A DNA stretch of 64,000 nucleotides from Iphione sp. A-MEVVRFRX5 (Eukaryota): positions 97,402,001 to 97,466,000 of the forward strand of contig OZ320315.1 of the NCBI GenBank assembly GCA_976226885.1, written 5' to 3'. Below are positions 4,531 through 64,000 of the stretch, piece after piece. The notes beneath the pieces are model-generated. The model was not told where the DNA came from. It was given only the letters and a program-made list of their open reading frames with translations, and did not search any database. Position numbers and translations under genes: made by a program. How positions within the stretch are numbered: the stretch's first letter is position 1; each line of letters opens with the position of its first letter.

Positions 4531-4584
4531 ACGAGCCTCTTAAAGGTCAGAGGCAGGGACAGTTTAACCTGCTCTATTCTGTGC

Positions 4585-14470: not shown

Positions 14471-14479
14471 CCACGCAAA

Positions 14480-19870: not shown

Positions 19871-19880
19871 ATCACGATAT

Positions 19881-20481: not shown

Positions 20482-20563
20482 CGTGTGACAGTCCTGATGA
20501 AAAGGTAGATAACATTGCATTCAGATGTTGTATAGTCGACTTCGTTGGGATGATATGTCACCA

Positions 20564-22129: not shown

Positions 22130-22199
22130 AATATCGACTTAACGGTACATTCTTAGGGAGCGCTCGACAGACACGTCTTAACACCATGACGACTTTCCA

Positions 22200-26205: not shown

Positions 26206-26959
26206 CTGTCAAGTAGGGTAACTTTGAACTGTGATTGTAACATGTTGAATCGATTTTAACTTTTCTTGTATGAAACACTACTCGCTTATATAGTGTGGTA
26301 ATGCACACGTGGTCGTTCTGGTTGATTTCACTCATGATGACTCGCCCTATTCATGCCGTCACCTTTAACTGAACACATGCAGTACCTGCTGTATTAATAT
26401 ATCTTGGCAATTGTATTATGGTATCGTTAGCTATGTCACCAACTGAATGTTGAATACTATAGTACATATCTAATGTTACCTCCCGAACACTGAAAGCCAC
26501 AATTGACTACACATACAACAACAAACATGTGGTCCTTTCTGAATTCCCACACAAAAACGGTGACCACACTGTTCCAACTGAACTTCTTTCGATTCTGGTT
26601 TTGAAAATTCCTTATTTGAACCTTTGTGAAGTTTACTATTCTGTCGTTTTGTGTCTACTTGTACTTCAGATATGCTATTTTTTGTCCTTGACTTTGTAGT
26701 AGGCTTTGAAACCTAAACAAAAACCTACTGGTGACCTTACATATGGTTCTTTTTTCATGGGGTATTACCATACCATACTCCTTGGTACAAGTCTCCCACC
26801 ACTGTGCACGTTTTCGGTAACAAGTCTATAGTTACCTCCAATACAATCACCGGGCTACTCATTTTGGGGGGAGTCTTTCTCGGAGTCCTTCTTGGGGACG
26901 CTCTTTGCCCTTTCTTGCCTTTGGGCACAGTATTTGTTGACGAAGCATGCCTTGCAAAA

Positions 26960-29900
26960 AAAAGAGCCATGTGACAGCACACAGTGCCTTAAGTTGACAT
27001 CTGACAAGCGGGATCTGTAAGGTGCGTTCCCGAAACTGGATCGTCTTGGTCACTCTCACCTGGAGCAACACACCGTAGCTGGTGAAAACGACATCCCCCC
27101 TGGTCAGCGGGTGGAACTCCGAGTCTTGGGACTTGAATATGTTTGACTTGCGGAGCAGGCTGCGAAAACACACGCAGACAGCGACCCAGGTGAGCCACTG
27201 GGTCCGATCAGACAGGTCAACATGGTGAAACATAGCTAGCAAATGGGAAGGGAACAGCGGGTACTTGAAACACACCTGGCAGCCTAGTTCCCTTTTTAGG
27301 CCACGCAGAAGAAACTGGATGCTGACCTCCTCCCTGAAGGTGTGGGGTAGACCCGCCTTCTTGTGCATCCAGATGACTCCAGACAGGTAGTTGTCAATGG
27401 TAGCGAAGGACAGGTCACTCGACAGGAAGGCGAGAAACCGCGCCACTGTCAAGGTAGAAGCAGGCAGTGCTGTGAGGTGGTGGGCACTGCAAAAATCGAA
27501 GAAACGTTTCCACTGCGAAGCCCTCGTCCTGTTAGTCTACATGGCAAAGGCACAGGACATGAGGAATCTGCGTCTGTTGTCGATCGCACCCAGGTCTGCA
27601 ACACAGGACATAAGGGTCAACACGTGACAACCCAGATGTGGAGCTGCGTGACAGACAGTCAGCAATAATGTTGGCTTGGGTAGGGATATACCTAGCAGTG
27701 ATTCGGAAATTAAACATCGCCGACCACCAGAAAACCTGATGGAGTATGGTCATGCACACCGGTTCATGAGACGTCCCTTTGTTGATAGCATGCTTCAGTC
27801 CCATGTTGTCCGTGTATAAGACTACATGCCTGGCACGCCATCTCGCAGCCCACCTGGCTGTCGCCATTAGCACCGCTGCCGCTTCTCTAGGAAAAATAGA
27901 GCTGCTACATGACTGTGGGAGGCCCACATCCAAGTGGTGGTGATGTCCCGCCGGGGGCTCCGCCACAAATGCCTCAGTGTGGTTGTCGACAAAGTTACCC
28001 CGTAACCAGTCGCCACACCAGGTTGCCCGTAACCTTCCAAGCTGGCATCCGTCTTGACACAATCGACAAGTGAATCGTGGTGAACGATGATCTTAGCTGA
28101 TCTGTTGAACACTGCGGTGAATTGCGACCACCATTCATGTCCATATGGAATTCACGACCAAGGCGTACCCTGCCAGCCTTGCTTCTCTGGGCGATGCCCA
28201 GTGTATCGATGATTCTGTGACAGAACGTTCTGCCCCCTTGAACCACTGACGCACAGTGGTTGAGCAAGCCCACGACACGTTGTAGCTGGCGAGTAGATGC
28301 CCTCTGTCGACCTGTGAAGAACTGCAGGTCCTTATGCAGGGCTTCTAGTTTGTGCGCAGGAAGATGTAATTGCATGTTGACCGTGTCCACCTTAATGCCA
28401 AGGAAAGTGCACACTTGCAATGGGGAAGTCAATTTCCCCCAGCTGATGTAGAAGCCCAAGTCTCTCAGCAGACCTATGGCAATCTGTTGATGGTCGACAC
28501 ATTCCTCCCTAGTGGGGGCCGCTATGAAGAAATCATCCAGATAGTTCACACACGAGACCCCTCTACGTGCCAGACGCGTTTAATGAAGCAACTGATATGG
28601 TGAAAGAGACAGGGAGCTGCCCTGGTGCCAAAACATACACAATTGTCCCTCAGGTAATAGTCGGTCCCCCCGAACTGCCACTTTAGACCTTGATACGACC
28701 TTTCTGTAGGGTGAACATTAACTGACCTGTAAGCAGATTTGATATCGATACAGCATGCGTAGTAGCCAGGGCCGATGACATCCGCCACCTGGTCAATCCT
28801 CGCGAAGGAGAATGTTTCTGTGGTGGCGTTCATGTGGCTGTTGATGGATATCCCTTTGGGCCTGCTACAGTCTGTGATGGGGCGAACACCCCCCCCCTTC
28901 TTTGGGACGGCTCCCAACGTGTGTATCTGCTTTGGTTTGTACGTCAGGACCGTGAGCTTGTCTTCCTCGATTTCCGACTGCAACAGGCGCGACAGGAATT
29001 CTCCATCGTCGTTGCTCCGACACGACTTGTAGTTTTCCACTTCATACTCTTCGATCATTGTGTGAGGATCAATCATGCGAAAACCGTAGGCTACCCCATC
29101 TAAAAGGTAATGCCCGTCTGGATCTTGACCCTCCTGAATTTCTCTGTGCCAGGCTCGGAGGCGTAGCTGGCTTCGTACCCCCCCCGATGGAGTTGGTGCT
29201 GCCTGCGCCCCAGGCTGACCGGAGGTTAGGATCGCCATAAATCAACATAATGTCCGGAGATGACACCACACTAGAAAAACCTCCTGATTTGACAATCCTG
29301 GCACCACCAAGCCTGTTTAGCTGGCCCGTGACTCCTCCTCCTTCTTCTTGGATGGACATTCTGAAACCTTATGTGATTTTCTGCAAGACGAACACACGTG
29401 CAGTCTGCGGCAGTTGGTGAAGGTGCATTCCCTCTTGTTAAACTGCCAGCACACGTCTTGGGGGAAACTCTCCCACTCCTTGCCCCGGCGCCTCTCCCTG
29501 TTCGACCTTGGAAACACTGGATCACCGGATAGGTAATAGGCAACACTGTCGGTGTCCGCTACGACCCAATCCGCCAATTCGCCCGTGAGCACCTTGGTTG
29601 TCACTGCATGCTCATACCTCACCAGGTTCTCTGCGGTGTAGCCCCTCTTGGACCCTTCAAACATAACAAACCTAAGATGATTCAGGTAACCCGCCATAGG
29701 AAGACAACATTTCATAATATAGGCCAGAACGCTTGACATGCCGTAAAACAGCTCACCGAGTTGAAGTCGCTCATGGGGAACGTCTCTTGGTACATGGACT
29801 TTGGGATGGAATCTGCTTGCGGACTTCTGCTTCCCATCGGAGTGAGCCTCTATATCCACAGCATTCTTGTCCTCGTTGAATGGTGATTCCAAGATCCCTG

Positions 29901-38994: not shown

Positions 38995-41751
38995 TTAAAT
39001 ACAGAATTTGTCAGGAACCCTTTTGCCAAGCTTTACACTGGGAGGTAATGCGTTCCATTTGACAGTCCCCTTGTAGCGGAGCGACTTGGCATACATAGCA
39101 CTGGTTGGTTTGCTGACATCTCCACACAAAGTCTGTCCTAGTCTCGTCATCGTCTTGATCTTAGAGGGTATAAGACCAAGACACATCAACTTATGCATAC
39201 ATTGCATACCTCGCATAGCAATCAAATCCTCTATCCTGGGGACATCAAATCGGTCATGTAGTACACGGGCAGGTAGGTAGTTTCTTACCTGGAGGCAGAC
39301 CCTAGCACATTTATGTATAAATGATTGTAGTCGGATTCTCTGTGACACACTAATAGCATATAGCATAATAGCATGAAAATTGACATGGGATAGCACTAAG
39401 GATACAAACAATTGTTTTCTAGCTGAGACCGGTAGCAGATGCTTGGTTCTGCCTATATGTAGGGCTGCCAACCACATCTTCTTTTTTAGGGCTTTAATTG
39501 TTAAGGTACACTTCAACTGACTGTCTACAAAGTAGCCTAGGAGAGTACAATTTGTCACCATTTTTAATTGTGCACCACCCAGAACTAGATCCAAGTCAAC
39601 ACCTGCTGCTCTTCCCACTTGTAGGTAGGAACACTTGGCAGCACTCAAGATAAGTCCAGTGTTTTTACTCCATTCAGAAACAGCTTGAATTACCTGTGAG
39701 CAACGATCACGAAGGAGCAGCAGATCCCTAGCAGCAATAGTTATAGACAGGTCGTCAGCATAAATGGTCGGTTTACAGAAGTTCGGTAAGTGTTGGACAA
39801 CATCATTAATTACAAGGATAAATGCATTCGGCCCAATGATTGAGCCCTGAGGCACGCCATGCTTAACAGGTTTAACAGTCGATATTTCACCCCTACACTT
39901 TACTCTCTGATGCCTGTCATCTAAATAGCTACTAAAAAACCTCCTAGTGCGAGGACCAACTCCTAGTTTTGCTAATTCAGATAATATTTTGCCATGCGGG
40001 ATAGTGTCAAAGGCCTTTTTAAAATCAAACATTAATATTGAGGTATATAGTCCTCGGTTGCAATACTCTTGAGCTTCCCCTATGATTGTCATGATAGCAG
40101 TTTCAGTTGATCTCAGACCCCTGAAACCATGCTGCGCTATATGTAGCAGTCCCTGTGCCTCAATCCAAGCCATCATCTTTCCCATCACCCATGCTTCTAA
40201 GATCTTCCCAGGAAGTGGGAGTATGGTGATTGGGCGGTAGTTTGCAATGTCTTCTCTGTTCCCCTTTTTGAACACCGGTGTTACTATCCCTTGTTTCCAT
40301 GACCCAGGGAAGGAGCCAGCTAACACACACCTGACGAACACCAAGGTTAGGAAGGCATGGAATCTGATTAATACTGGTTTTAAGATTTTTGTCGGGACAC
40401 CTTCAATTCCAGAAGGTTTAGTTAGTTTCTGTTTGTTAACAAGAGCAACAACCTCCCTTGGTTCTGGAATAGGAAGCTCAAACTGTTGCCCTGTCACACT
40501 GTCAACACATTCATACTCCTTTCTCGACCCGTCAACCAGCTTGTCCACCTCACTAATGAAGAAGTCATTAAAACAGTCCGCTAATCCCTTATTCCCACTA
40601 ATAATGTTCACAGCACTCGGTAGGGTGTTCTTATTACCCGCTCTTCCCGTCACCTCATTTAGCACTGCCCATGTCTTCCTGGAGTCACCTTGTGCCTCGC
40701 TAAGCCTACTATGCCACCATGCCCTCCTTTCTGATTTTAAGGCCTTCTTCACTTTCCTATCAAGATGCTTATAAATTCGCAAGTCATCCAATGAGCCAAA
40801 CATTCTCCATTTTTTGAAAAAGTATTCCCTATCTTTACGAAGGCTATTTAAACCAGCACTTGGTTCAAAATTGCCCTTATCTAGCCTCACCTTCCTACAT
40901 TTTTCTGGACAAGACGATGCCAGCTCCTCTTTTAGTCTGACTTCAAACTCATCCCATCTCAGTGTAGGGTCTCCTTCCATTTTGCCTACCCCATACTCCT
41001 CTAAGGTTTCACACAAATCTGGCACATCTACCTTCCCCCATTCTCTGTATGACTGGGTTTCTACACTACGGAAGCCCCCACCCTTTTTAATGGTGACAGA
41101 TACAGGGAGATGATCACTAAGGTGAAGAGAGCCCACCTCCGACCCCCTATGGTCATCGAAGTTCACCCAGAGGTGATCAAGGCATCTGTCCGACTCTATC
41201 ATTGTGGACTCTGTTACTAACTGTCTTAGTCCCCTCCCATGCAGGTAATTTGCCACCCCCAATCCTGCTTTGCATGTATTGGAGTAATGGTAGTTGAAAT
41301 CCCCACCCACTACCCTGTCACTCCTCCTCAAGTTAAAGAAATCTTTCATGGCATTGTCAATAGCATGCACAGAATCCGCAGCCCTGTCCCCTGGCGGCCT
41401 GTACACACAGAGTAGTTCGATTGGGCGCCTCATTCCTGCCTTTAGTTTTATCCCTAGAATTTCTGTTAAAGAGTCTGCAACTGCTAGCACTTTACTGTCT
41501 AACAAGTTGTAATGTGATCTGTAATAGATTATCAGTCCCCCACCCTTCTTCTTACAGGTAGGGGGCCTGTCCGCCCTGATTGCACTATACCCTGGAATAT
41601 CTACACTGCTGTCCAAGTTGTTACCCGATAGCCAGCTTTCCGTTATTCCACATATATCAACACCCTCCTTATACAGATATTCAGCCAAACAATTTTTCTT
41701 CTTTGCTAAGCTTCTTATGTTATAGAACATTACTTTGATGCCCGGGGCCAT
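38995..41751 (-). CDS. Intact 918-aa APE endonuclease-reverse transcriptase
   Basis: YNIRS, ITESWL, GGDFN, CLDH and SDH (APE catalytic set). NYRPI, QHGFR, DFKKAFD, GVPQGS and YADD (RT). Confidence 0.96.
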   Translation of the reverse strand: MAPGIKVMFYNIRSLAKKKNCLAEYLYKEGVDICGITESWLSGNNLDSSVDIPGYSAIRADRPPTCKKKGGGLIIYYRSHYNLLDSKVLAVADSLTEILGIKLKAGMRRPIELLCVYRPPGDRAADSVHAIDNAMKDFFNLRRSDRVVGGDFNYHYSNTCKAGLGVANYLHGRGLRQLVTESTMIESDRCLDHLWVNFDDHRGSEVGSLHLSDHLPVSVTIKKGGGFRSVETQSYREWGKVDVPDLCETLEEYGVGKMEGDPTLRWDEFEVRLKEELASSCPEKCRKVRLDKGNFEPSAGLNSLRKDREYFFKKWRMFGSLDDLRIYKHLDRKVKKALKSERRAWWHSRLSEAQGDSRKTWAVLNEVTGRAGNKNTLPSAVNIISGNKGLADCFNDFFISEVDKLVDGSRKEYECVDSVTGQQFELPIPEPREVVALVNKQKLTKPSGIEGVPTKILKPVLIRFHAFLTLVFVRCVLAGSFPGSWKQGIVTPVFKKGNREDIANYRPITILPLPGKILEAWVMGKMMAWIEAQGLLHIAQHGFRGLRSTETAIMTIIGEAQEYCNRGLYTSILMFDFKKAFDTIPHGKILSELAKLGVGPRTRRFFSSYLDDRHQRVKCRGEISTVKPVKHGVPQGSIIGPNAFILVINDVVQHLPNFCKPTIYADDLSITIAARDLLLLRDRCSQVIQAVSEWSKNTGLILSAAKCSYLQVGRAAGVDLDLVLGGAQLKMVTNCTLLGYFVDSQLKCTLTIKALKKKMWLAALHIGRTKHLLPVSARKQLFVSLVLSHVNFHAIMLYAISVSQRIRLQSFIHKCARVCLQVRNYLPARVLHDRFDVPRIEDLIAMRGMQCMHKLMCLGLIPSKIKTMTRLGQTLCGDVSKPTSAMYAKSLRYKGTVKWNALPPSVKLGKRVPDKFCI

Positions 41752-42675
41752 TCTGGTGGAGAAGTAGGGACAACAAGACTTTTGGCAGTAAATGCAGAAT
41801 CAAGGTATCACAGGTCGTAGCTGCCACTCACTGATTACCATCCAATATCCTATCTGCACATAGTACAGGACTTTGGTTCAATACTAGCATTGTACGATGC
41901 TACAGTATCTCCCTAGTTAGAAGGAGGAAAAAGGGGGGGTAGAACTGAAGCTAGTACAAAAATAGACAGACTAGTATAATGTGCCGATTTCTAATTTATA
42001 CATGATTCATACGGGAAAATACAGGTGTTAGAGGTACTAAAGCAGTATCACAAGTATTTAGGGACTATGGAAAGTTACTTATGGCCAACTGCACCTCAGA
42101 AAATGTTACATGAGATGCAGCATCAGGGGTATTAAAATAAAGTACAATATTAGCGATTGCTATGTAGACACATATGAATATGCAAATCACAAAATCTCGG
42201 ATGAAACTTTCTGGATAAATGTCAATAGTTCGTAATCACAGATTGTTTGCTGATTGTCGTAGCTACCATACACCAATAATAGTTGAGTGCAAAAAACACT
42301 TCTTGGCAAAAGCACCTAGAGTAATACTTTCACTATATCTGGATTAATTGGTAAATACAACTAACACCTTTTATATTTGCCTTTCTCAGGGTAACAAGCT
42401 CCTTAATGATCAATGTACAGCCTATTACCTGAATAGATAGTGATCAGAAAGAACTTGGGTATACAGGTACAATAGTAAATGGAATCACAGTTCAGATTCA
42501 GTCTTTTCCAACGTTAGAGGTGAGTAATCAGTAGGTTCGAAATAAACAAGATACAGATGGTATTGGGTGCTCTCCCGGATGGGTATCTGTCAGGAAACAA
42601 TTTTCTAGATTATGAGTCTACAAAAAAACACACTCTGTGTGCCAGGCCTGTGTATATGATCATTAGGCCAAAATC

Positions 42676-43392
42676 CTACCAGTGAACTTGATGCAGGGCA
42701 CCATTGTTGCTGACGTGGAAGTGTCCATACATCCTAATATACTCATGGAGGAATTGTCTTATGGTGTAACTCCAATCGTTCAACGTCCCCATCTTTGGGG
42801 TGAAGCCATCTCCCTCAAGACGATCAAAGTAGTTGTAGATTTCACCGGCAGATGGGATGCTAACTGGCTGTGCCAAAGTACATGGAAACATGCCGATAGC
42901 ACTAGAAGACGCTTCACATCTCAAGTTGAGAATGGTAACCGCAGCATCCAACTTGAACTGTTCATCCTCATCCTCCATGTCAGGCTCCATTCGTCCTAGA
43001 TCCACACTTGCAGCTGGACAGCATACCACATGGGGGCCTCCATTCGGGGCCTTGCCACACAGGTCATAGATCCTCTGCATGTATTTCTCCAGGTAATCAC
43101 TATACGTAGCAGGGGAACCAGTGCTCACGGACCACTGGCCCGTTTCGTTGATGACCCAGTCATCCATGCCAGAGCTGATGAGAATCAGATGGAATTGACT
43201 AACATCAGTATACAAAAGCCACCTGCATATTTTTCTGTATGATGCCCTCCTCATCGATACCAAGTGGATTCGGGTCGGCGGTAACAAGTGCAGCACATCC
43301 TCTAACAACTTGAAAGCAGGTGCGCTCCTCCTGTCACTTAGAACTAGGATACGAGTCTTGTGGCTTGCCGAACCCGCTGGCGGATGTTCCAT
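42676..43392 (-). CDS. Stand-alone SGNH/GDSL-fold protein, 238 aa from Met 43392
   Basis: RILVLSDRRS (block I-like), LILISSGMDD (block III-like), EGDGFTP..LNDWSYTIRQFL (block V-like). Confidence 0.7.
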   Translation of the reverse strand: MEHPPAGSASHKTRILVLSDRRSAPAFKLLEDVLHLLPPTRIHLVSMRRASYRKICRWLLYTDVSQFHLILISSGMDDWVINETGQWSVSTGSPATYSDYLEKYMQRIYDLCGKAPNGGPHVVCCPAASVDLGRMEPDMEDEDEQFKLDAAVTILNLRCEASSSAIGMFPCTLAQPVSIPSAGEIYNYFDRLEGDGFTPKMGTLNDWSYTIRQFLHEYIRMYGHFHVSNNGALHQVHW

Positions 43393-43491
43393 CTTTCGCA
43401 CTAGCAAGGGAGAGAAAAACACATATCATAGCCTACACATCTGAATGCGATTGCCTGAGATCCGGATGCATATGAAGATACAGGCTCTAAA

Positions 43492-44664
43492 TTATGCTTG
43501 CATCAGTTCTGATCGAATTTTCATTAGCACTTCACCCACAAGGTTTTTGCCTTCTCCCCTCAGGAGCTCATTGGGATTGCTAAACACGACTTTGTTGTTG
43601 CCAGTCCCTAGATCTAGGTCACGGTCGACGTAAGCGATCAATTTGTTTCCTGTCGTCATCAAGAAGGTTTTAACAGTCGGATTGGCATTAATTACGGCTC
43701 TGTAGACTTTATCAACTATTACCTTTGAATTTGAGTCCCATTCTTGATTCTTCTTGACAGATATATTTGCTTTTCTCACCGCAGATAAGCTAGTTGCGTT
43801 TCGAACGTTGCGCTCCAGTTTTAGATCTGGTACTGCACGAGAGCGGAGGTGATGGATAGCAACTTCCGGCAAGTCGTAGTGTTTACCTTCTATCTCCACC
43901 GGCCCTAGAGAATTAGGCGCAAATAGGTTGTTGTCAGCATCAAACAGGAACTCCTTGTCATTTTCCCAGGTGCTAGCTGTATTGTCACATAGGAATTCGG
44001 GGAGGTAAGTCTTGTCAAGAGGGGAGAAACGTTCACCGTCGAGTAACAGGTCGACTCCCCTGACAGTCGCCTTGCTGCCGTGTTCCCTTGCCTTTCGTGC
44101 TAGACGTTGCTGCGTAGTATTATAGTCAACAGCAGACATGGGGAGATCCTCTTTTATGTAGATTTGACGTGTCGATTCGTTCTTAATTAGCTTAAAGCGG
44201 GCTTTCAAGATGGTGTTGCGTGTTTCAATCGAGTCAAGCAGCACGCCAACCCTTAGCCTGTCTTTATTTACATTGTGACAGTGACAGTCAATAACTTCAC
44301 TCTCTCTGATGTTCGCAGTGTTCTTTAACAATTTGCGAACATAGCACTTCAGATTCTGCTTCTCAGCCACAGGAATTCCTTCTATTGTTATTTTCCTGCA
44401 GCGGTCATTGACTTCTAATCTTGTCAGTTCCAGCTTAGCCTTAGCCTGTTTTACCAACCCAAGGTGTACTGGATCACAACAGGCAGCAGACACAGATATC
44501 ATGGAAGAACCAGCAGGAACAGAGCTGAGAGAGCATTCTACTACCCCAGCACTGTCTTGCCGAGCCCTTTTTGATGATCTACTCCCAGAGGAGGATCTTT
44601 TGGCTCTTTTTTGCTGCCTAGGCTGCTCAGATGACATGTCCATAACTGAAGAAGCCAAATCCAT
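43492..44664 (-). CDS. ORF1p: basic N-terminus + L1-type RRM/CTD + divergent NADAR-fold domain
   Basis: RCRKITIEGIP...ETRNTILKARFKL..IYIKEDLP (RRM/CTD). aa ~250-400 has VEIEGKHY, QEWDS, FLMTTGNKLI, GEGKNLVGEVLMKIRSEL (NADAR). Confidence 0.85.
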   Translation of the reverse strand: MDLASSVMDMSSEQPRQQKRAKRSSSGSRSSKRARQDSAGVVECSLSSVPAGSSMISVSAACCDPVHLGLVKQAKAKLELTRLEVNDRCRKITIEGIPVAEKQNLKCYVRKLLKNTANIRESEVIDCHCHNVNKDRLRVGVLLDSIETRNTILKARFKLIKNESTRQIYIKEDLPMSAVDYNTTQQRLARKAREHGSKATVRGVDLLLDGERFSPLDKTYLPEFLCDNTASTWENDKEFLFDADNNLFAPNSLGPVEIEGKHYDLPEVAIHHLRSRAVPDLKLERNVRNATSLSAVRKANISVKKNQEWDSNSKVIVDKVYRAVINANPTVKTFLMTTGNKLIAYVDRDLDLGTGNNKVVFSNPNELLRGEGKNLVGEVLMKIRSELMQA

Positions 44665-45129
44665 GATAACAATAAACAACAAATGACACAAAATCAACAA
44701 AGCAAAGCTGAAAATACTCCTTTTGATGATCCTGGTAAGAAAATAGTATCACAATTTACCTTTACCCTATCTAGCTTCTGCAGGAAGTCTGGTATGTCTT
44801 GTATGTAAGATTTAGTTCCCTTGATGATAGGTTTCAAGAGTGATGGCTTGGGGGATTCAGGAAGTAGTTGCCTGGCTATCTCCCACGGGATTTCGTCTTC
44901 TTGTTGGAGGTGTGTAATTAGTGTCTTTATACTCTATACCAGGGTCAGTTTCCAGTGTTTGTCACTGAGTTGTCTCACCCCTTCCATTCTGTTTTCTTCT
45001 GCACCCCATACAAGGTGCCCAACGACAACCAACGGCAAAAAAAGAAAAAGGCTGTAGGTGGCTAAGGTGGCTACAGTGGGTGGTACTCCACACTACAGAC
45101 TAGTTGGGGGTGGTCAGTGCAAGATGCAT

Positions 45130-45860: not shown

Positions 45861-46339
45861 TCCTTTCTCAATGGTTTACTCATCTGTATAGCACTATGTA
45901 TGCCAATAGTGACGTTTAAGTACCTGTAGTAACTTGTTGCAGGAATCCCTTTTCCAGTCCAGTATTTCTATGGTCAAGGTGTCCTTCTCATTCCCGTCCT
46001 CATCAATGATCATGTCTGGGTCCACAGATCATCTTCTATAGAAGACACGGTAAGCAGGGTGTTCTCTGAAGAATAATTAGTAATTTGTTAGAACCCCCTT
46101 TGGATGCACCTCGTAGGTTAATCCCTTCTGTGCGATTATTTTGTGTGCAACCACACACTCATTGTGTATGTATCTCATACGCAATCTTTCTCATTTCTGA
46201 AATAACAACCAATATCATAGTTATACATACTGGCAGAGAATTTCCTGGTCCATTCCCTTGAAGCAGAACTGTGTCATTGTTCTGTCTGTTTTACTATTGT
46301 TTTTCCTAAGCACTTGTGATTGGTGATTCCGAGTGTTTG

Positions 46340-49300
46340 CTTTCATTCTCCTCTTCTCTTCTCAAATTGAATCGAAGATGAGAATGCCTAGTCTGAAAGG
46401 TAAAATGGGTTTGTTTCACAACTTAGTTGTGACTCTTAACTACATTCGCATATTTTCAACAAATTCACATCAGAGCATGACTGTTTTATCACTATTTCTT
46501 TGGACTCATACCTTCTCAACAGCATCTTTCATGAACACTGGGTGCCTCACTCTGGGGTAGCATATCACAACCAGGAACCATTGACTCCTGCAGACGTGAT
46601 AGGGTTATTACGCAAAATACAGTGGAAATTGTTGTTGAAGGGATGTTGCTTTATATCATATTCAGCCTGAATGCAAATACTACAAGGTCACAGAAATGCA
46701 TGAATCAGACAAATTACAATTATATACCTCTGACTCAACTGGGAGATTCCACCCAACCACCTCTAAGAAAATGAATTTGTAATCATACTACGTACAAGAT
46801 TAGCACCACTAAAGAAAGCTTTTTGTCGCAATATCTGAAAAACAATTCCTCTTCTCTTCTCATCTCAGATTGAATCAAAGATGAGGATGCCTGGTCTGAA
46901 AAGTAAAATGGGTTTGTTTCACAAGCTGGTTGTGACTATATTAAAATATTTTCAACAAACTCACATGAGAGCATGACTGTTTTATCACTATTTCCTTGGA
47001 CTCATCCATTCTCAAGAGCATCTTTGAGTAGCACTAGGTGCTTCAGTCTTGGGTAGCATATCACAACCAGAAACCAGGGACTCCTGCAGACATGACAGGA
47101 TCACAGAAATACATGAATCATACAAAGTACAATTATATATGTCTGACTCAAACCATTGCCCTTGAGATTTGTTAAATGCCAGTGGAAGAATAAGCTGAAT
47201 ATGTGAGTTCTTGTACAATCCTCTTCTGACAATATCTCATAGAAAATGTATTTGTGGAAAGAAAGGGTTCAGAACAGATAAGTAAAAATTACGCAGAATA
47301 CAGTGCCTAAAAAATGCTTCAAACACATCTACACTTGTAAATGTAGATCAATGTAGAGAGAGCTACTTGATTTCCTTTCCATATAAGACTTATGAATTGT
47401 AGGAAGGATTACTGCACTTCTTCTATTTACTACCTGGTACTCTTCTACAAGAATTGATATGTTCACTCATACACATGCCAACATATAAAGTACAAAACCC
47501 GGAGATTCGGCCCAACCACCCCTGACCTAAGAAAATGAAATTGAGCGACTTTGCAATCATACTACTTACAAGACTAACACCACAAATCTTCACTAGATTG
47601 GAATATTTTCAACAAACTCACATGAGAGCATGACTGTTTAATCACTATTTCCCTGGAGTCATCCCTTCTCAATGGCATCTTTGAGTAGCACTAGGTGCTT
47701 CAGTCCTGGGTAGCATATGACAAACAGGAACTGGTGACTCTTGCAGACATGACAGGATCACAGAAATGCACGAATCATACAAAGTACAATTATATACATC
47801 TGACTCAAATCATCACCCTTGTGATTTATTAAATGCCAGTGGAAGAATAAGTTGAATATGTGAGTTCTTGTATCATCCTCTTTCTGACAATATCTCATAG
47901 AAAATGTATTCATGGAAAGAAAGGGTTCAGAACAGATAAGTAAAAATCCCAGAGAATTCAGTGCCTAAAAAATGCTTCAAACACATCTGCACTAGTAAAT
48001 GTAGAGCAATGTAGAGGGAGCCACTGGATTTGCTTTCCATATAAGGTTATGAATCTTAGGAGGGATTACGGCAATAAGCACAAAACCGGGAGATTCCACC
48101 CAACCATCTCTGACCTAACAAAATGAAATTGAGTGGCTTTGCAATGTTACTACTTACAAGACTAGCACTACTAAAGAAAACTTTTTGTAGCAATATCTGA
48201 AAAATAATTCCTCTCCTCTTCTCTTCTTAAATTGAATCAAAGATGAGAATGCCTAGTCTGAAAGGTAAAATTGGTTTGTTTCACAACTTGGTTGTGACTC
48301 TTAACTACATTCGCATATTTTCAACAAATTCACATCAGAGCATGACTGTTTTATCACTATTTCCTTGGACTCATACCTTCTCAACAGCATCTTTCATGAA
48401 CACTGGGTGCCTCACTCTGGAGTAGCATATCACAACCAGGAACCAGTGACTCCTGCAGGCGTGATAGGGTTATTACGCAAAATACAGTGGAAATTGTTGT
48501 TGAAGGGATGTTGCTTTATATCATATTCAGCCTCAATGCAAATACTACAAGGTCGCAGAAATGCATGAATCAGACAAATTACAATTATATACCTCTGACT
48601 CAACTGGGAGATTCCACCCAACCACCTCTAAGAAAATGAATTTGTAATCATACTACGTACAAGACTAGCACCACTAAAGAAAGCTTTTTGTTGCAATATC
48701 TGAAAAACAATTCCTCTTCTCTTCTCATCTCAGATTGAATCAAAGATGAGGATGCCTGGTCTCAAAAGTAAAATGGGTTTGTCTCACAAACTGGTTGTAA
48801 CTACATTCAAATATTTTCAGCAAACTCGCATGAGAGCATGACTGTTTTATCACTATTTCCTTGGACTCATCCATTCTCAAGAGCATCTTTGAGTAGCACT
48901 AGGTTCTTTCAGTTTGGGTAGCATATCACAACCAGAAGCCAGTGACTCCTGCAGACATGAGAGGATCACAGAAATACGTGAATCATACAAAGGACAATTA
49001 TATATGTCTGACTCAAACCATTGCCCTTGTGATTTTTTAAATGCCAGTGGAAGAATAAGTTGAATATGTGAGTTCTTGTATGATCCTCTTCTGACAATAT
49101 CTCATAGAAAATGTATTCATGGAAAGAAAGGGTTCAGAACAGAATTCTGTGTCTAAAAATGCTTCAAACACATCTGCACTAGTAAATGTAGAGCAATGTA
49201 GAGGGAACCACTGGATTTGCTTTCCATATAAGGTTTATGAAATTCTGGGAGGGATTACTGCAATTCTTATATTTACTACCTGGTACTATTCTACAGGAAT

Positions 49301-49640
49301 GATATTATTAATTCATAAACATGCAAATATACACAGCACAAAACTGAGAGATTCCACCCAACCACCTCTGACCTAACAAGATGAAATTGAGCCACTTAGT
49401 AATCATACTTACAAGACTAGCACCACTAAAGAAAGCTTTTTGTCTCAATTTCCTAAAAAACAATTCCTCTTCTCTTCTCATCTGAGTTTGAATCAAAGAT
49501 CGGGATGTCTGTACATGAGAGTATGACTGTTTCATCACTATTTCCTTTGAGTCCTCCCTTCTGAAGAGCATCTTTGATGAGCACTGGGTGCCTTAGTCCA
49601 GGACAGCATATCACAACCAGGAACTCCTGAATAACAAACC
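46340..49640 (-). repeat. Higher-order tandem array (about 6 subunits, about 1.87-kb duplication) of decayed SENP6/7-like C48 SUMO-protease exons
   Basis: Repeated minus-strand segments read YIFYEILSEEDCTRTHIFSLFF, tctgcag|G-SHWFLVVICY and tttcag|A-PGILIFDSI*. Anchors at 46378/48242 and 46880/48746 are about 1865 nt apart. Confidence 0.78.
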
Positions 49641-50149
49641 AGACAATCATTTAGCTTGTACCCAGTTGACGTTTTGTACTATCTAAAGTTATGTCAAGGA
49701 ATTATTTTAATATTTTATTCATGGTCTCTTTGAAAACAGATACACCTTTTAGCTCTATAACCCGCGCTGCCGGACAGAAATGGATCCCAACCATGGTCTT
49801 GTACTACTTGTGTATTATTCACCTGTTGTGGTGCCTAACCAAGGTGTGGGCATGTCCTGGTTTGTATTGTGGACCACAAACTCATTGATTTTACTGATAG
49901 CGTTGTTAATAATCATTGCAAATGCGAATCTACTGGGGTTATCACATTTCCATTCGGGAAAAACCCAAATGGTTTTGTCTAAACAAACATACTATTAGTA
50001 TCTAAACTATGTACACCCTCCTTTTCCCCAATATAAAAACAATAAAGCCCGATGAGACAACTGTCGAAACCGTGTCATAAGTGCCAAAACACAGCCATAA
50101 ACTCCAGTAATCTGAATCAATAAATGATTCACTACCTTACCCCCTTGAA

Positions 50150-50748: not shown

Positions 50749-50924
50749 AATATCGCTAGGGTCTGGGTCGAGGAATCTTGTTAGGGGTAATATCGCTAGG
50801 GCCTGGGTCGAGGAATCTTGTTAGGGGTTTGAATATGTTGTGTAGAGTGATAAGGGTGGCGCTCTCCAGGCCTTCTGGGTCGAGGAATCTTGTTAGGGGT
50901 TTGAATATGTTGTGTAGAGTGATA
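50749..50924. repeat. Nested short duplications (40-nt tandem pair plus about 50-nt repeat)
   Basis: ctgggtcgaggaatcttgttagggg occurs three times. Confidence 0.9.
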
Positions 50925-53900
50925 GGCCTTCCTTAAAGCTTATAGGAAGTGTAGCTTTCGGGTCTTCACGTCCACGTTCGCGCTTATGTTGGCACCTCTG
51001 CTGGGTTCGCCTTTACGGAGGGATCTGGGACCTCCCAGATTGAGCAAGGGAAAAGGGTCTTGGTTCTGGTTAGCTGGCAAGTGCAACGGGACGATGTTGC
51101 CTTAGTGATTCCTTAATGCGCTACATCTCTTCTCGAGCATGTATATTATCTTAATACACATAAGTCTGTTCTAAGACTTGTCATCTCCCTTAAAAAAGAT
51201 GGCCAATCGGATGGTAAGGATACTGCTTAGCAGGATGAGTGCAATGCTGTCAGCTAATCGGGCATCGTTCTGTGATGGCTCATCCCAGCTAACACAGAAA
51301 CGTGTTTAGAACGCTCTAAAAACATTGTATAACACATTCTAAAGATCCTGGGCCTAGGCATTTTTTGGTGAGGCCTCCTCCTTGGCCCCCTTTTCTGGCC
51401 TCTTGGGCTTCTGGCATGGTCTGTCATCTCCCCCGGTGAGACGTGCTTTCTTCATACACTCATGCCCGGGTGGGGGCACTCTTATCCAAGGGTTGCAGGG
51501 TGCCCAAGCCCCGCAATTGCCCCCCAGAGGTTCTTCTCAGGATTAGTAACCCAGGCTCTACATGATGGTGGTCCAGTCGTTCCTGGTGGCCCCAATGCAT
51601 ACCTGCCTCACATGGTGGATTAGCGGTGTGGGACCCTGCCCTTCGTTTCGTTTCATTGTATCTTTAATCAGGAATACTTTCACCTATCATCATGACAGGG
51701 TTCTTCCATATTCTCCTGTGGTAGCATGCTACTATCTATTATTAAGAATTAAGCTCCGGGAGGCTGTTTGCCTGGTGTTCAGTATGGCTAGCATGGTTTG
51801 GAGTAGGCCTATGCATGGCCTCCTGTCCCTCACTGCTCTCCCGATGATGGTCATACATTGTCTTCGGGCCACCCCAATCAGCACGGGACAAGGCCTGGTG
51901 GAGGGCCTCAGACTCCCTGTCAGAGTGACCTGCTATGCTGTGCTTGGAGGACTTTGTCCTGGAGTGCTGAGGATTATGCTGTCGACATCTGAGGTAGTCT
52001 GTTGAATGGGGTGGTCTGGCTCGATGTAGTCTGATCTCTGGGTGGTCTGGCGCTAAAATATGCACTCTGCTATTCACTAGTTGGCCACTATTCACTCTTT
52101 CCTTCACCTTTTCTGCCATAATGCCCTTCCACTCCTGGTCATTATGGACCATTTTATTAGACGAATTTATCAGCGAGGTTGTCTTGAATTAAGATAAGAA
52201 ACAATTTTATTCAATCATCCAACAATCACCTCCAAGAGGCGGTATTAAGAGTGTGGAAGGGAAGATACATGGGATATGTGCAAATACAATTTGATTATGT
52301 TGAGTACAATAGTAGGTAATATCAATTAAATTTTGCAACACTTAATTCGGTGACATGAAGTAGTAATAACACAGGCAAGTAATTCACACAGGATTGCAGG
52401 AAATTACAACAATTTAAATAACCGCTAACTAAAGGTTGCTATAATTCAAATGTGACATCAGTTTAAAATCAACCATTGATTCAGCACTTCTTCACATTAC
52501 ATCAAGACTACACAGACTTTCTTACTAGTTCATTTCTTTGTTTGGGTATGGATAAAACATCATCATCATGCATTTTGGTGTTCAGCTCATGTTCTTTAGG
52601 CAATAATGTAAGCAGATGAAGGTTGTGAATTATGTTAAGAGAATTATGTTACAGAACTCTGTAGCATATTGTTACTCCTACCATATTTTTTTGACCTGAC
52701 ATGGTCAATTGCTAGTGCTCAATCTTAAAGCCTCTGTATCCTGATCAGGTAATTCGAATGTACTGTTAAGTAATCAACTTGAGGCATGATTTTTTATATA
52801 GTATGATTCGATCATGACAATTGAAGTGAAATCGCTTTCTGTATAACATGTTATATTGATCAAATCTTATTTGCTTCAAGGTTGAATTTTATTCTCTTTT
52901 AAATTATTACCCCTAAATAGGTATACTGATCAGCATACGGAAGTACTTCCTTGCCCAAGAGTTGAATATGAGAATGTATGCATCCTCAGCCAATCAGATT
53001 GCTATAAACCATGACAGTCACGGTTCTTTTTGTTTACATTGGTACGTTTGCGTTGGAAACAGTGAGAGAAATGCATGCATTGGATTGTGGCATGCAAGAG
53101 ATACTCTCACCAGCTGAATGTAGCTATGATAGTTTATGCTTCTTTCGAGAGTTTCTTTATAGTAGTAACGCTTTATATATCTTTTATTTAAGTAATGCAG
53201 CAACACAAATCGTATGGAACAGTATAAGTAAGTAATGAATCCAAAATTAAAAGCGAAAGTCGTTTCGTTGCGGCTTGAAGATTAATTAGTTTGTCAATTA
53301 GGCATCACGTTTTGACCTTCATTTATGAAATAAGAAATTTAATCTTTAACAGAACACATTAAACATGAACTTAATGTTAGAATTCGAAGAGGTCCTTCAA
53401 AAGAGACAGACATCTTGATGCCTTTTCAAACTCTGGAAATGATGTAAAATATTAATCAATAGAATGTAAACAGACAATAACATGACAGGGATAGAGAAGG
53501 AAGAAAGAGAAAGAGGAGAAAGAGGAAATACATTACAGGTATACCTCTCTTAGTAAAGCTGTATTCAGAAAGATTACAATTTAATTTAAAATTTCTTGAT
53601 AGATGCAGTATATATTTTCATCAGTTAGCATTTTTTCCAGTAAAATATGAAGAACACAAAAATATGAAGACCACAAAGAGATTTTCTCAGAGGATTTGGT
53701 AAAGGAAATATACCTGAATAAATCCAGCATTTCTCCATTAAATATTGATAAACTTGTAAGATTCTTGGTCACTGATAACTGGCGGAGTACCAGGACCATG
53801 ACTCGGTATAAAATATTTTTGTTGGGTAACTAATTGTTTTTATAAAAGTGTATTTATTATGTTGGTGAAATTCTGATGGGGAATATAATCTCCTAGGGCG

Positions 53901-61591: not shown

Positions 61592-64000
61592 GTATTGTAT
61601 TGTATTGTATTCTTTATTTCGGAATCTCTGTTTACAGACAAAGCTTTTCACCCGAAAGCCAAGTTCGGGCACTTACTTAGAGGATGTGATTTATAATAAT
61701 TAAGGTAGTAATGAGAACATTCAAGACTGAGATAGCCATTAACCGGTCATGAGTAAATACTTAATAACCTGATCAGTGACGTTAGCGCTATGCAATCAAC
61801 TATACAAGCTGTACAAAAGTGAATCGACATCTGAGGCATGTAATAAAGATGAGAACAATCAGTCAAAATATTCTATCCTTTGTCACAAGTGAATAAGAGA
61901 ACAAAATAGACATCGTCTTGGCTTATTACAAATATTGCACAATGTACTCTTTCTTAGTATAGCGATCACAAAAGTACAAAAGTCACTTAAAAGTACGTTT
62001 CGGCTAATTGCAGATACAAAACAAATTGACACTGTTGAAGTCATTATATATATTGCCTGACGTACTCACCTAGAATAGCAATCACAGTTGGCATTTTAAA
62101 TATTTGGTTCGGCTAATTACAAGTATTGCACCAATACTCTCTTAATAAAGTGATCACAGTTGGCAGTTAAGATACTGGTGTTACACTCGTAATTTGGTCA
62201 AATAGCACTAGGTGTATCCAGTATGGCTGAGGTGTCGGATGGTAACAGCCATCAAATCACAGGCACAATCGTGTAATAGGATATCCCAATATACTCTCTT
62301 GCATGGGGTATCACAGATTGGTTGTCTACACACACACAATCACATTCCATTCATTCATAGCCCCATTCACACTACATACTCAATTACACAAACAGTTATA
62401 CATACTCATCTCATACCATTTTTCCATCTACGCCAGTCGCACTCTTTTAGCACCTTACCCAACTTTACCTGGTTTGGAAGTTCACTCCAACTTGCTACCC
62501 CTCTGTATCTCAATGATCTAGCAAATCTCATCGAGCGGGGCCTGCACACTTTCCCTCGCGTTCTGCTACCCATTCGTGTTTTGGTACCCAATCCCTTCGG
62601 TAGGAGCTCCAACCGCATCAGCTTGTGCACTACCGCAGTCCCCCTATATTCGATCATGTCGAAGACCCTGTCCATACCTAGCCTCCGTTGTAGATTTGTA
62701 GCACTCTGACCATCCTTAGTGATCAGTGCAGCTCTCACACAACGGTTTAGAGTGATCTGTAGCTTCACTTTGTTCGAGTAGCTAACCCCGAACAACAGCC
62801 CAGCTGTGTAAACCAGATGAGTTAGCACTAGTGCTCTGAATAGCATTAGCCTCACATGAAGGGGTACCCAATGTTTTATTCTGGCAATCTGCGTAGACGC
62901 TCTCCACATTTTGGCCGACGTGTTGCGGATCGCACCACCGTAGTCGAGTTTTGAATCAATGTCAAACCCCAGGAGTTTTACATTGGTTGATGCCGCTAGT
63001 TTAGTTTCGCCTATTTTCAAATCAAGGTCGAGACCAGTGGCAGTACCAAGGGGCATGTGTACGCATTTAGTAGAGCTTAGTAGGAGACCGTTGTCGCTGC
63101 ACCAATTTACAACGGAGTCAAGAGCTCGTGCCGCTTGGCTTCTCAATCGCATAAGGTCCCGCGCATGCACCAGGACAGTTAGATCATCTGCATAAAGCAC
63201 CGCTGATGCTTGGTTGGGGAGCACAGCTGTAACTGAGTCCACTACAAGGTTAAAACCTAACGGGCCAAACACCGACCCTTGCGGTACCCCATGGCAGACC
63301 ACTCTTTTGCTCGACTCGCTGTCGCCACACCTGACAAACTGACTCCTATCAGTGAGGTAGCTACTGATCATTGCCAGTAAGTTTTTACCACCCCCCACCA
63401 TCCGCAGCCGATAGAGTACATTGTCCCTGCTCACTAAGTCAAAGGCTTTTTTTAGATCGAATAAAAGCCAACATACGTACTCTTTTTGGTTAATCAGCTC
63501 TTGTGTGTCACATACGAGCTTTGCGGCCGCTGTTTCTGTACTGAACCCCTCCCTGAAGCCGTGTTGCATCATGCTGAGACTACTTTGCCGGGTCAAGTTG
63601 TTATTGATTTCCTGGCAGAACCACTTCTCACACAACTTACCAGGGAGGGGCAGTATCGACACAGGACGGTAGTTTGTCAAGTTGTTGGGGTCCCCTCCTT
63701 TGTGAATTGGACAAACCCGTGCCGTTTTCCATGCTCTGGGATATCGTCCTGTAGCATAAATCTGCTCAAATGTCCATGAAAGGAATGCTGCATGTCTAAG
63801 AAGAATTGGCTTGAGGATCCTAGTTGGGATCCCACTGAGCCCGGATGATTTTTCTATGGACACCCTCTGGACAATTTTCCTGACTTCATCAGGAGTCGGT
63901 GGGCGGATATCAAAGGTTTCGCCACGTGCGGTTGTTGATATATGCACTGGAGGTGTCCATGGCTGGCTTAACCTATCAACTGAGTCTACAAAATGGTTGT
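61592..64000 (-). mobile_element. LINE related to copy 3 (open RT to window edge, about 0.8-kb 3' UTR, AATAAA + (AATAC)4 tail)
   Basis: RT ORF of 513+ aa with GVPQGS and YADD. C-terminus SLRYRG..W..LP..VKLGK as in copy 3. Tail at 61592-61611. Confidence 0.92.

What the first reader, a model, noticed from the sequence alone, without database searches (positions are those of the whole stretch)
46340..49640. Tandem array built from decayed SENP6/7-like SUMO-protease catalytic exons
What looks like a satellite translates on the minus strand to YIFYEILSEEDCTRTHIFSLFF (47251-47185; also near 47.9 and 49.1 kb), SHWFLVVICY (exon starts 46587, 47083, 47740, 48452, 48948, about 49626) and PGILIFDSI (46392, 46895, 48257, 48760). 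These match the Ulp2/SENP6-7 motifs YL.LEKL..ED..R.HIFSSFF, HWFLAV.CFP (catalytic His) and CIL..DSL (catalytic Asp), and keep splice-acceptor context. It is therefore amplified genomic, not retrocopied, DNA. It is co-oriented with the TEs. SUMO is required for piRNA-guided transcriptional silencing in flies and some transposons carry C48 proteases, so this could be an antisense small-RNA source against a deSUMOylase or the remains of a TE-captured gene.
Basis: partly seen in the sequence, partly recalled or inferred. Interest (0 to 1): 0.72.

Follow-up and report, generated by a model that had tools for sequence, protein, structure and literature searches.

The report
Tandem array of dead SENP exons
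A 3.3-kb stretch holds six tandem copies of a broken piece (three exons with their short introns) of a SENP6/7-type SUMO-protease gene, lying among transposons that all face the same way; it cannot make a protease and is most likely inert repeated DNA, although it resembles a fly locus that makes small RNAs against just such a gene.

Summary
Window 46347-49626 (minus strand) is a six-unit tandem array of 496-712 bp units, organised as a roughly 1.87-kb higher-order repeat present twice. It carries three exon types of a Ulp2/SENP6-7-class C48 protease gene. Exon HMMs built from real SENP6/7-type genes hit only the array in the whole window: A, E 3e-8; B, all six copies, E 1e-6 to 1e-3; C, weak. 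The acceptor sites of B and C lie at exactly the intron position and phase found in many real genes, so this is genomic DNA and not a retrocopy. The piece is dead. The exon carrying the W-T/DIF/PINE motifs and the Cys-box exon are missing. Stop codons are shared between copies. The catalytic His survives in 3 of 6 copies. Exons and introns have diverged equally (87.2% against 87.8%). No parent gene could be found because the organism has no close relative in the collections. All eight or more TE insertions in the window share the array's strand. The small-RNA idea is untested, but it has a close precedent in the Drosophila petrel/pirate locus. It is most likely an inert amplified pseudogene fragment.

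The parts
46347..49626 (-). Whole tandem array: six units, in the minus-strand order B C L A | B C S | B C L A | B (C deleted) L A | B C S | B C(truncated). L is the long spacer and S the short spacer.
48949..49626 (-). Unit u1 (long). It lacks the two stop codons shared by u2-u6. It has a 6-nt deletion that removes the His-Trp codons and a deletion of about 75 bp covering the B-C intron, which creates a 65-aa ORF (49456-49650).
48453..48948 (-). Unit u2 (short, 496 bp). It lacks exon A through a 350-bp deletion and carries an 83-bp insertion.
47741..48452 (-). Unit u3 (long, 712 bp).
47084..47740 (-). Unit u4 (long). Exon C is deleted apart from its last ~17 nt.
46588..47083 (-). Unit u5 (short). 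It is the partner of u2, at 93-100% identity by segment.
46347..46587 (-). Unit u6, cut off inside exon C. It is the partner of u3, at 97-98% identity over exon B and the B-C intron (89% over the 45 nt of exon C it keeps).
49019..49116 (-). Exon A copy 1 (YIFYEILSEEDHTRTHIFNLFFHWHLKNHKGN). A pyrimidine tract lies upstream, but GA stands in place of the AG acceptor. The donor is G|GTTTGAGT.
47811..47909 (-). Exon A copy 2, frameshifted by a 1-nt insertion. The donor is lost (GAT).
47154..47251 (-). Exon A copy 3 (YIFYEILSEEDCTRTHIFSLFFHWHLTNLKGN). It gives the best match: HMM E 2.6e-8 and PDB SENP7 E 0.033.
49515..49626 (-). Exon B copy 1 (His-Trp deleted; EFLVVICCPGLRHPVLIKDALQKGG...).
48830..48948 (-). 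Exon B copy 2 (SHWLLVVICYPN*...). His is intact and the acceptor is ctgcag|G.
48334..48452 (-). Exon B copy 3 (SHWFLVVICYSRVRHPVFMKDAVEKV*). His is intact.
47622..47740 (-). Exon B copy 4 (SHQFLFVICYPGL...). His is kept and Trp is lost. The acceptor has mutated to caa.
46965..47083 (-). Exon B copy 5 (SPWFLVVICYPRL...), with His changed to Pro.
46469..46587 (-). Exon B copy 6 (SQWFLVVICYPRV...), with His changed to Gln.
49413..49509 (-). Exon C copy 1 (DIPIFDSNSDEKRRGIVF*...). There is no stop after DS., and the copy is fused to exon B.
48661..48760 (-). Exon C copy 2 (PGILIFDSI*DEKRRGIVFQILQQKAFFSGASL). The acceptor has mutated (ttgag|A) and the donor is GTACGT.
48158..48257 (-). Exon C copy 3 (LGILIFDSI*EEKRRGIIFQILLQ...). 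The acceptor is tttcag|A and the donor is GTAAGT.
46796..46895 (-). Exon C copy 5 (PGILIFDSI*DEKRRGIVFQILRQKAFFSGANL). The acceptor is ttttcag|A.
46347..46392 (-). Exon C copy 6, truncated. The array ends here.

Best explanation
The array is a tandemly amplified, non-coding relic of a genomic fragment of a SENP6/7 (Ulp2-class, Peptidase C48) gene. The ancestral unit of about 0.7 kb held part of an upstream intron, exon A (the helix with the H-I-F-S-x-F-F motif), a 71-nt intron, exon B (catalytic His, HWFLVVICYP), an intron of about 75 nt, exon C (catalytic Asp, PCILIFDS, here with Cys changed to Gly) and part of the downstream intron. The unit was already dead before most of the amplification. 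The coding segment between A and B (RVxxWT..DIF.KDF..PINE) had been deleted, and two stop codons are shared by units u2-u6. Unequal crossing-over then produced units, a short variant lacking exon A, and finally a three-unit higher-order repeat that was duplicated once. This series of events is inferred. The copies now drift neutrally and are strongly CpG-depleted. The array makes no protease. The most likely present role is none. It sits in a TE-dense stretch where every TE points the same way, so any transcript that is antisense to the TEs would also be antisense to these exons. That point is an inference.
For: Array anatomy. Family assignment: PDB hits are to SENP7 only, for exon A (E 0.033) and for the exon B profile (E 0.19, residues 132-144). 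tblastn with a Pfam-verified C48 protein (L025, Peptidase_C48 E 8.8e-32) finds only the array in the 64-kb window (E 3e-5 and 5e-4). tblastx to many real SENP6/7-type loci covers exons A, B and C. Exon HMMs give A at E 2.6e-8, 3e-7 and 4e-3, B in all six copies at E 1e-6 to 1e-3, and the four C copies as the four best hits in the window. Genomic origin: the B acceptor AG lies 4 nt before the His codon, as in 20 of 27 loci. The C acceptor AG lies 1 nt before the Pro codon, as in 11-12 loci, with near-identical nucleotides to L005. A pyrimidine tract lies at the conserved exon A boundary. Decay: exon identity is 87.2% against 87.8% for introns. There are shared stops and His is lost in 3 of 6 copies. 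CpG o/e is 0.18 against 0.49 for the window. No pre-A, X or Cys-box exon exists anywhere in the window.
Against: No parent gene was found, so neither the origin (dispersed duplicate or dead gene in place) nor the similarity to a living target is known. Inertness is a default and not a result, because no expression or small-RNA data exist here. Exon A is more alike between copies (94%) than its surroundings (about 88%), but this rests on only three pairs. Exon C alone is statistically weak (E 0.6-1.4).
Confidence: 0.7

Rival explanations
1. The array is a petrel-like small-RNA source. It lies in a one-strand piRNA cluster transcribed from the plus strand, and it yields piRNAs antisense to a living Ulp2-type SUMO-protease gene and represses it.
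For: At least 8 of 8 TE insertions with Pfam support share the minus strand with the array (binomial p about 0.008). The array consists of local repeats of a host-gene fragment between TEs, as at the Drosophila Y-linked petrel locus, where more than 20 local copies of the Ulp2-like gene CG12717/pirate give antisense piRNAs that silence it (PMC8168559).
Against: There are no small-RNA or expression data. The copies differ from each other by about 12%, whereas piRNA targeting at petrel works at about 92% identity and does not affect the paralogue velo. No parent is known. Only about 300 nt of exon per unit is available, and there are only six units. There are no inverted copies that could form a hairpin RNA.
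Confidence: 0.15
2. The fragment was captured and carried by a transposon (Helitron-like, Pack-type or similar) and the array is the remains of that element.
For: The neighbourhood is TE-rich. TEs that carry C48 domains are known: oomycete Cryptons (PMC3212892) and Helitron-like elements (PMC11417382). The fragment is partial and rearranged, as captured fragments often are.
Against: There are no terminal inverted repeats and no transposase or Rep-helicase ORF at the array. The unit occurs nowhere else in the window. The sequence and the intron positions are those of host SENP6/7 genes, not of an intronless TE ORF. A tandem arrangement is explained more simply by unequal crossing-over.
Confidence: 0.08
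3. The array is the corpse, in its original place, of a SENP6/7 paralogue whose middle exons were duplicated internally and whose other exons were destroyed by TE insertions.
For: One metagenome (contigs Ga0194135) holds at least four distinct SENP6/7-type genes, so paralogue turnover does occur in this family. The unit keeps real introns.
Against: No other exon of the catalytic domain lies within 46 kb downstream or 14 kb upstream.
Confidence: 0.07
4. The array is an ordinary satellite whose likeness to C48 is chance, or it is a processed retrocopy.
For: Pfam gives no Peptidase_C48 hit for any single stop-free piece.
Against: Two exon types independently return only SENP7 in the PDB. Exon HMMs reach E 1e-6 to 1e-8 and hit only the array. 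The acceptor positions and phases are identical to those of real genes. Introns are present, so it is not a retrocopy.
Confidence: 0.01

Closest known systems
petrel locus / pirate (CG12717) of Drosophila melanogaster (PMC8168559)
   Same: Fragments of an Ulp2-class SUMO-protease gene have been duplicated locally many times between TEs, have lost coding potential, and lie in a TE-rich region.
   Different: petrel holds nearly the whole gene in more than 20 copies over 200 kb and is shown to make antisense piRNAs. Here there are six units of three exons in 3.3 kb, nothing is known about RNA, and the parent gene is unknown. The host is not a drosophilid: the window is CpG-depleted and holds an element with a tyrosine-recombinase ORF.
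Su(Ste) and AT-chX repeats of Drosophila (gene-derived tandem repeats that give piRNAs against Stellate and vasa)
   Same: They are tandem repeats derived from host-gene sequence.
   Different: Those repeats have been tested functionally. This array has not.
Living SENP6/7 (Ulp2-type) genes, for example the gene on metagenome contigs L028 and L010
   Same: The motifs occur in the same order. The same three intron positions are used: before exon A, 4 nt before the His codon, and 1 nt before the Pro of PCIL. The 'ICYP' variant is shared, and identity to exon A is 52%.
   Different: The array lacks the pre-A exon, the W-T/DIF/PINE segment, the Cys box and everything else. It has stop codons and lost catalytic residues.
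C48 domains carried by transposons (oomycete Cryptons, Helitron-like elements, plant MULEs)
   Same: A C48-related sequence lies among TEs.
   Different: [quoted passage not shown] Here the sequence is Ulp2/SENP6-7-like, split by host-type introns, and has no transposase beside it.
Higher-order-repeat satellites and tandemly duplicated pseudogene fragments
   Same: There is a unit of about 0.5-0.7 kb, a three-unit higher-order repeat, and neutral divergence.
   Different: Copy number in the window is low (six units). The unit is recognisably gene-derived.

Membership tests
Peptidase C48, SENP6/7-Ulp2 subfamily (as a gene relic) | Significant sequence similarity to the catalytic-domain core | tested here: met
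   Exon HMMs give A at E 2.6e-8 and B at E 1e-6. tblastn with Pfam-verified L025 gives E 3e-5. The PDB returns SENP7 only.
Peptidase C48, SENP6/7-Ulp2 subfamily (as a gene relic) | Pfam Peptidase_C48 gathering score | tested here: not met
   No Pfam hit for any of ten stop-free pieces, even at E up to 10.
Peptidase C48, SENP6/7-Ulp2 subfamily (as a gene relic) | Subfamily signature (HIFSSFFY helix; HW[FY]L[AV]V[IV]C[FY]P; PCIL..DS) | tested here: met
   All three motifs are present in order. Only SENP7 is hit in the PDB. The same motifs are found in 30 metagenome loci.
Peptidase C48, SENP6/7-Ulp2 subfamily (as a gene relic) | Family-typical intron positions and phases | tested here: met
   The B acceptor is 4 nt before the His codon (20 of 27 loci). 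The C acceptor is 1 nt before the Pro codon (11-12 loci). The exon A boundary is at the conserved site but its AG is lost.
Functional C48 protease | Complete His-Asp-Cys triad and an open reading frame | tested here: not met
   His is present in 3 of 6 B copies. Asp is present. There is no Cys-box exon in the window. Every unit contains stop codons, and the W-T/DIF/PINE segment is missing.
Gene-fragment array in a piRNA cluster (petrel / Su(Ste) / AT-chX type) | Local tandem copies of a host-gene fragment in a TE-rich region | tested here: met
Gene-fragment array in a piRNA cluster (petrel / Su(Ste) / AT-chX type) | Strand-biased TE content, as in one-strand clusters | tested here: met
   At least 8 of 8 TE insertions are on the minus strand.
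Gene-fragment array in a piRNA cluster (petrel / Su(Ste) / AT-chX type) | Small RNAs antisense to a living parent gene of high identity | not testable with these tools
   No small-RNA data are available, and no parent was found.
Processed pseudogene (retrocopy) | Introns absent, exons joined at splice junctions | tested here: not met
   Introns with GT..AG ends are retained between A-B and B-C in most units. The fusion in u1 is an imprecise deletion and runs on into the next intron.
Transposon-borne C48 | C48 ORF inside an element with a transposase and defined termini | tested here: not met
   No ORF, transposase or terminal repeat lies at the array. Genome-wide copy number could not be tested.

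The most novel reading that the evidence does not exclude
In an animal far from Drosophila, fragments of an Ulp2-class SUMO-protease gene have been amplified inside a one-strand, TE-antisense piRNA cluster and feed small RNAs against the living deSUMOylase. That would be a second, independent origin of the petrel/pirate arrangement. It would suggest a recurrent conflict between the piRNA machinery, which depends on SUMO, and SUMO removal.
Probability: 0.12. Interest if true: 0.75.

Novelty: new member of a known kind. Interest (0 to 1): 0.4.

Why it matters
As it stands, this is a well-documented example of how a few exons of a housekeeping gene can turn into a small satellite, and that is ordinary genome decay. 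It would matter if the array proved to be a small-RNA source. The only well-studied case of piRNAs silencing a SUMO protease (pirate, in D. melanogaster) involves the same gene subfamily and the same kind of locus. A second, independent case would make small-RNA control of deSUMOylation a testable general theme.

Tried and rejected
- **Tandem Repeats Finder:** TRF does not see the array because the period exceeds 500.
- **Pfam on pieces:** ten stop-free pieces gave nothing.
- **PDB with other queries:** phmmer with the 65-aa fused B-C ORF gave nothing. The 59-position B-C profile was diluted by the variable loop.
- **Word search:** exon A found no candidates.
- **Full representative search:** the 39-aa exon A query gave one hit, P0001 (E 9e-4). 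It is a 180-bp satellite ORF on metagenome contig L001 with no DNA similarity to the array. The score is inflated by three repeats, so I rejected it as spurious.
- **The search for related loci:** exon A against metagenome contigs found nothing.
- **Alternative exon C start:** I supposed that exon C starts at CCAG|GC, which would give 'S-CILIFDS'. I rejected this because real genes place the acceptor 1 nt before the Pro codon, as the array's ttttcag|A does.
- **Remnant of the missing exon:** I supposed that the tail of the exon A ORF (LSQTYIIVLCMIH) was a remnant of the missing exon. The test was not significant (p = 0.2).
- **Other scans:** inverted repeats or TIRs around the array, none. Rfam, none. 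Bacterial promoter and terminator scans are irrelevant to a eukaryote.
- **Identifying the organism:** an exact look-up of the LINE ORF found nothing. The best relatives of the LINE ORF2 are only 27% identical.
- **Joined model:** I did not build or search a joined (spliced) A+B+C model. Exons were searched one by one by reference, and in scripts the unspliced six-frame translation was read with X at stops.
Full report
**1. The observation.**
Reading the minus strand of 46000-50000 and comparing the region with itself shows a direct-repeat array confined to 46347-49626. Start-to-start spacings are 496-712 bp. A 1.4-kb block (46347-47732) recurs at 48212-49625 with 87.6% identity. Nothing else in the 64-kb window resembles it. 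Tandem Repeats Finder reports nothing here because its longest period is 500. The window contains no N.

- Exon A starts at 49116, 47909 and 47251.
- Exon B starts at 49626, 48948, 48452, 47740, 47083 and 46587.
- Exon C starts at 48760, 48257, 46895 and 46392, and an altered fifth copy is fused to exon B at about 49509.

**2. Anatomy.**
A multiple alignment of the six units gives, on the minus strand: u1 (B, C, long spacer, A), u2 (B, C, short spacer), u3 (B, C, long spacer, A), u4 (B, C deleted, long spacer, A), u5 (B, C, short spacer) and u6 (B, C truncated).
- The short units u2 and u5 differ from the long ones by a 350-bp deletion that removes exon A, plus an 83-bp insertion.
- u1-u2-u3 and u4-u5-u6 are the two copies of a three-unit higher-order repeat. 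By segment, u2/u5 are 89-100% identical, u3/u6 89-98% and u1/u4 84-96%.
- Units u2-u6 share a TGA after '..E(N/K)G' in exon B. Four C copies share a stop after 'FDSI'.
- u1 lacks both stops, but it has lost the His-Trp codons through a 6-nt deletion and has lost the B-C intron through an imprecise deletion of about 75 bp. This makes the only sizeable ORF in the coding frame of these exons (65 aa, 49456-49650).
- The catalytic His codon survives in u2, u3 and u4 only.

**3. Is it C48?**
No single stop-free piece reaches any Pfam model. The pieces are 32-68 aa, so that is not surprising. Other tests are clear.
- Against 177,635 distinct PDB sequences, exon A returns only SENP7 (3eay and 7r2e, E 0.033, residues 57-92). 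A profile of the six exon B copies also returns only SENP7 (E 0.19, residues 132-144). Two independent queries hitting the same protein in the right order cannot be chance.
- A degenerate DNA pattern for HW[FY]L[AV]V[IV]C[FY]P found 30 loci in metagenome contigs, where about one match was expected by chance (my estimate). These are real SENP6/7-type genes from eukaryotic DNA in those samples.
- Two intronless ORFs among them are Pfam Peptidase_C48 at E 8.8e-32 (L025:324-2930:-) and E 2e-26 (L013).
- tblastn with the L025 catalytic region against the whole window finds only the array (E 3e-5 and 5e-4). Everything else is at E above 1.
- tblastx of the array against the loci aligns exons A, B and C with many of them. 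Examples are L009, L028 and L006, and L022 for all three exons.
- Exon-specific HMMs built from the loci and searched against 1284 six-frame pieces of the window hit the three A copies (E 2.6e-8, 3e-7, 4e-3) and all six B copies (E 1e-6 to 1.4e-3). The four C copies are the four best C hits, but they are weak (E 0.6-1.4). The next best hits elsewhere are at E above 2.

**4. Genomic or retrocopied?**
- In 20 of 27 assessable loci the acceptor AG lies exactly 4 nt before the His codon. Six loci have no intron there and one differs. The array has ctgcag|G AGT CAC TGG at the same place and in the same phase.
- In 11-12 loci an acceptor lies 1 nt before the Pro codon of (R)PCIL..DS. The array has ttttcag|A CCA GGC ATC CTC ATC TTT GAT TCA, against cctttcag|A CCC TGC ATC CTC ATC TTC GAC TCC in L005.
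- At the 5' side of exon A, six genes (L003, L006, L009, L018, L019, L028) have an acceptor 1 nt before the Tyr codon. The array has the pyrimidine tract at that spot, but with GA or AA in place of AG.

The unit is therefore intron-bearing genomic DNA and not a retrocopy. The gene on contigs L028 and L010 has the same three introns and the 'ICYP' variant. It is the closest relative I could find, but it is not the parent, because there is no DNA-level similarity beyond the exons.

**5. What is missing, and how decayed is it?**
Real genes carry 'R.H.RV..WT..(I/V)(D/N).F.KDF...P(I/V)NE' between A and B, either as the end of the same exon or as a separate exon. In the array, only 71 nt lie between A and B, beginning with GT and ending with AG. 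A and B do not join in frame. The translated tail after exon A is not significantly like the missing segment (p = 0.2).

The window also contains no pre-A exon (FLNDVIIDFYLK) and no Cys-box exon. Identity between copies is 87.2% in exons and 87.8% in introns and spacers, so there is no coding constraint. Exon A alone is higher (94%), but this rests on three pairs only. CpG observed/expected is 0.18 in the array against 0.49 for the window, which fits old, methylated DNA.

**6. Surroundings.**
The window is a mosaic of retroelements.
- Two LINEs have APE and RT domains (38995-44700 and 17097-22613).
- Further RT fragments lie at 303-815, 6741-8101, 26859-29238 and 62406-63947.
- An element with a tyrosine-recombinase ORF lies at 12455-14590, with a relative at 4509-5244.

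All of these are on the minus strand, like the array. That is at least 8 of 8, two-sided binomial p about 0.008. No plus-strand ORF shows a TE domain.

The array has no flanking inverted repeats, no Rfam match and no meaningful plus-strand ORF. The organism could not be named, since the best relatives of the LINE ORF2 are only 27% identical. NADAR-domain ORF1s like those seen here have been noted in Tx1 LINEs of the Pacific oyster (PMC12477816). That is a weak hint of a mollusc-like host and no more.

**7. Explanation.**
The best-supported reading is an inert relic. A genomic fragment of a SENP6/7-type gene, already disabled, was amplified by unequal crossing-over. It is now drifting in a TE-dense, probably methylated region. 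The following are shown:
- the family of origin;
- the genomic (intron-bearing) nature of the copy;
- the lack of coding capacity;
- the neutral divergence;
- the higher-order structure.

The order of events is inferred, and so is the lack of function.

The Y-linked petrel locus of D. melanogaster consists of more than 20 local copies of the Ulp2-like SUMO-protease gene CG12717/pirate between TEs. It produces antisense piRNAs that silence the parent but not its paralogue velo (PMC8168559). The one-strand TE orientation here fits such a cluster. However, the units are about 12% apart, no parent is known, and there are no RNA data.

TE capture is possible, and C48 domains do occur in Cryptons and Helitron-like elements. 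Nothing in the sequence supports it here, and the host-type introns argue against a TE-borne ORF.

**8. Searches that found no parent.**
- The word search with exon A found nothing.
- The full representative search gave one spurious satellite ORF.
- The search for related loci found nothing.

**9. Housekeeping.**
- I built no joined (spliced) model and searched none. Exons were searched one at a time by reference. In scripts the unspliced translation carried X at stops.
- Among the fetched loci, L023 is an intronless, mammal-like SENP6 coding sequence. From memory of the human protein it differs at many loop positions, so I did not take it for human. It appears in the first comparisons. I left it out of the final HMMs and the intron table and did not search for more of it.
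- None of the other loci looks human.

**10. Verdict.**
The origin from SENP6/7 exons, the decay, the genomic nature and the co-orientation with the TEs are supported. The functional readings are untested. This is a new member of a known kind: a gene-fragment tandem array in TE-rich DNA. It is of moderate interest because of the parallel with petrel/pirate.

Noticed in passing
window 1-64000: Every TE ORF with Pfam support lies on the minus strand: 303-815, 6741-8101, 12455-13789, 17097-22613, 26859-29238, 38995-44700 and 62406-63947, plus 4509-5244, which is similar to 13547-14244. That is at least 8 of 8, p about 0.008. The layout resembles a one-strand piRNA cluster, but this was not tested.
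   Followed up: partly
window 43492-44700 and 20564-21187 (minus strand): Two diverged LINEs each carry a NADAR-domain ORF upstream of the APE/RT ORF. The ORF2s are 28% identical and the NADAR ORFs 25%. The domain therefore looks like an old part of this LINE clade. NADAR ORF1s have been mentioned for oyster Tx1 LINEs (PMC12477816).
   Followed up: partly
window 49456-49650 (minus strand): In unit u1 the B-C intron is replaced by 6 nt (GTACAG), which fuses exons B and C into a 65-aa ORF without the two stops shared by the other units. The deletion is intron-sized but not a clean splice junction, and the copy runs on into the next intron.
   Followed up: partly
L002, L010/L028, L011/L012, L027 (contigs Ga0194135_...): One metagenome holds at least four distinct SENP6/7-type genes with short introns. 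Some unidentified eukaryote therefore carries an expanded family of these proteases.
   Followed up: no
L001 (ENA ERZ19566176 scaffold_156412), protein P0001: This is a 180-bp satellite called as a 284-aa protein. Its repeat 'LSADSDC..RHCFKI.LWW.RTN' mimics exon A closely enough to reach E 9e-4 in the full search. It has no DNA similarity to the array.
   Followed up: yes
L023 (ERZ786672 NODE-347): An intronless 1160-aa, mammal-like SENP6 coding sequence sits in a metagenome assembly. It is presumably host cDNA or contamination. I did not take it for human and did not pursue it.
   Followed up: no
window 50749-50828 and 53642-53677: Two small tandem repeats lie near the array (40 bp x 2 and 17 bp x 2.1). 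No link to the array is apparent.
   Followed up: no
window 46347-49626: CpG observed/expected is 0.18 in the array against 0.49 for the window and 0.37-0.64 in 8-kb bins. The array looks older or more heavily methylated than the neighbouring TEs.
   Followed up: partly
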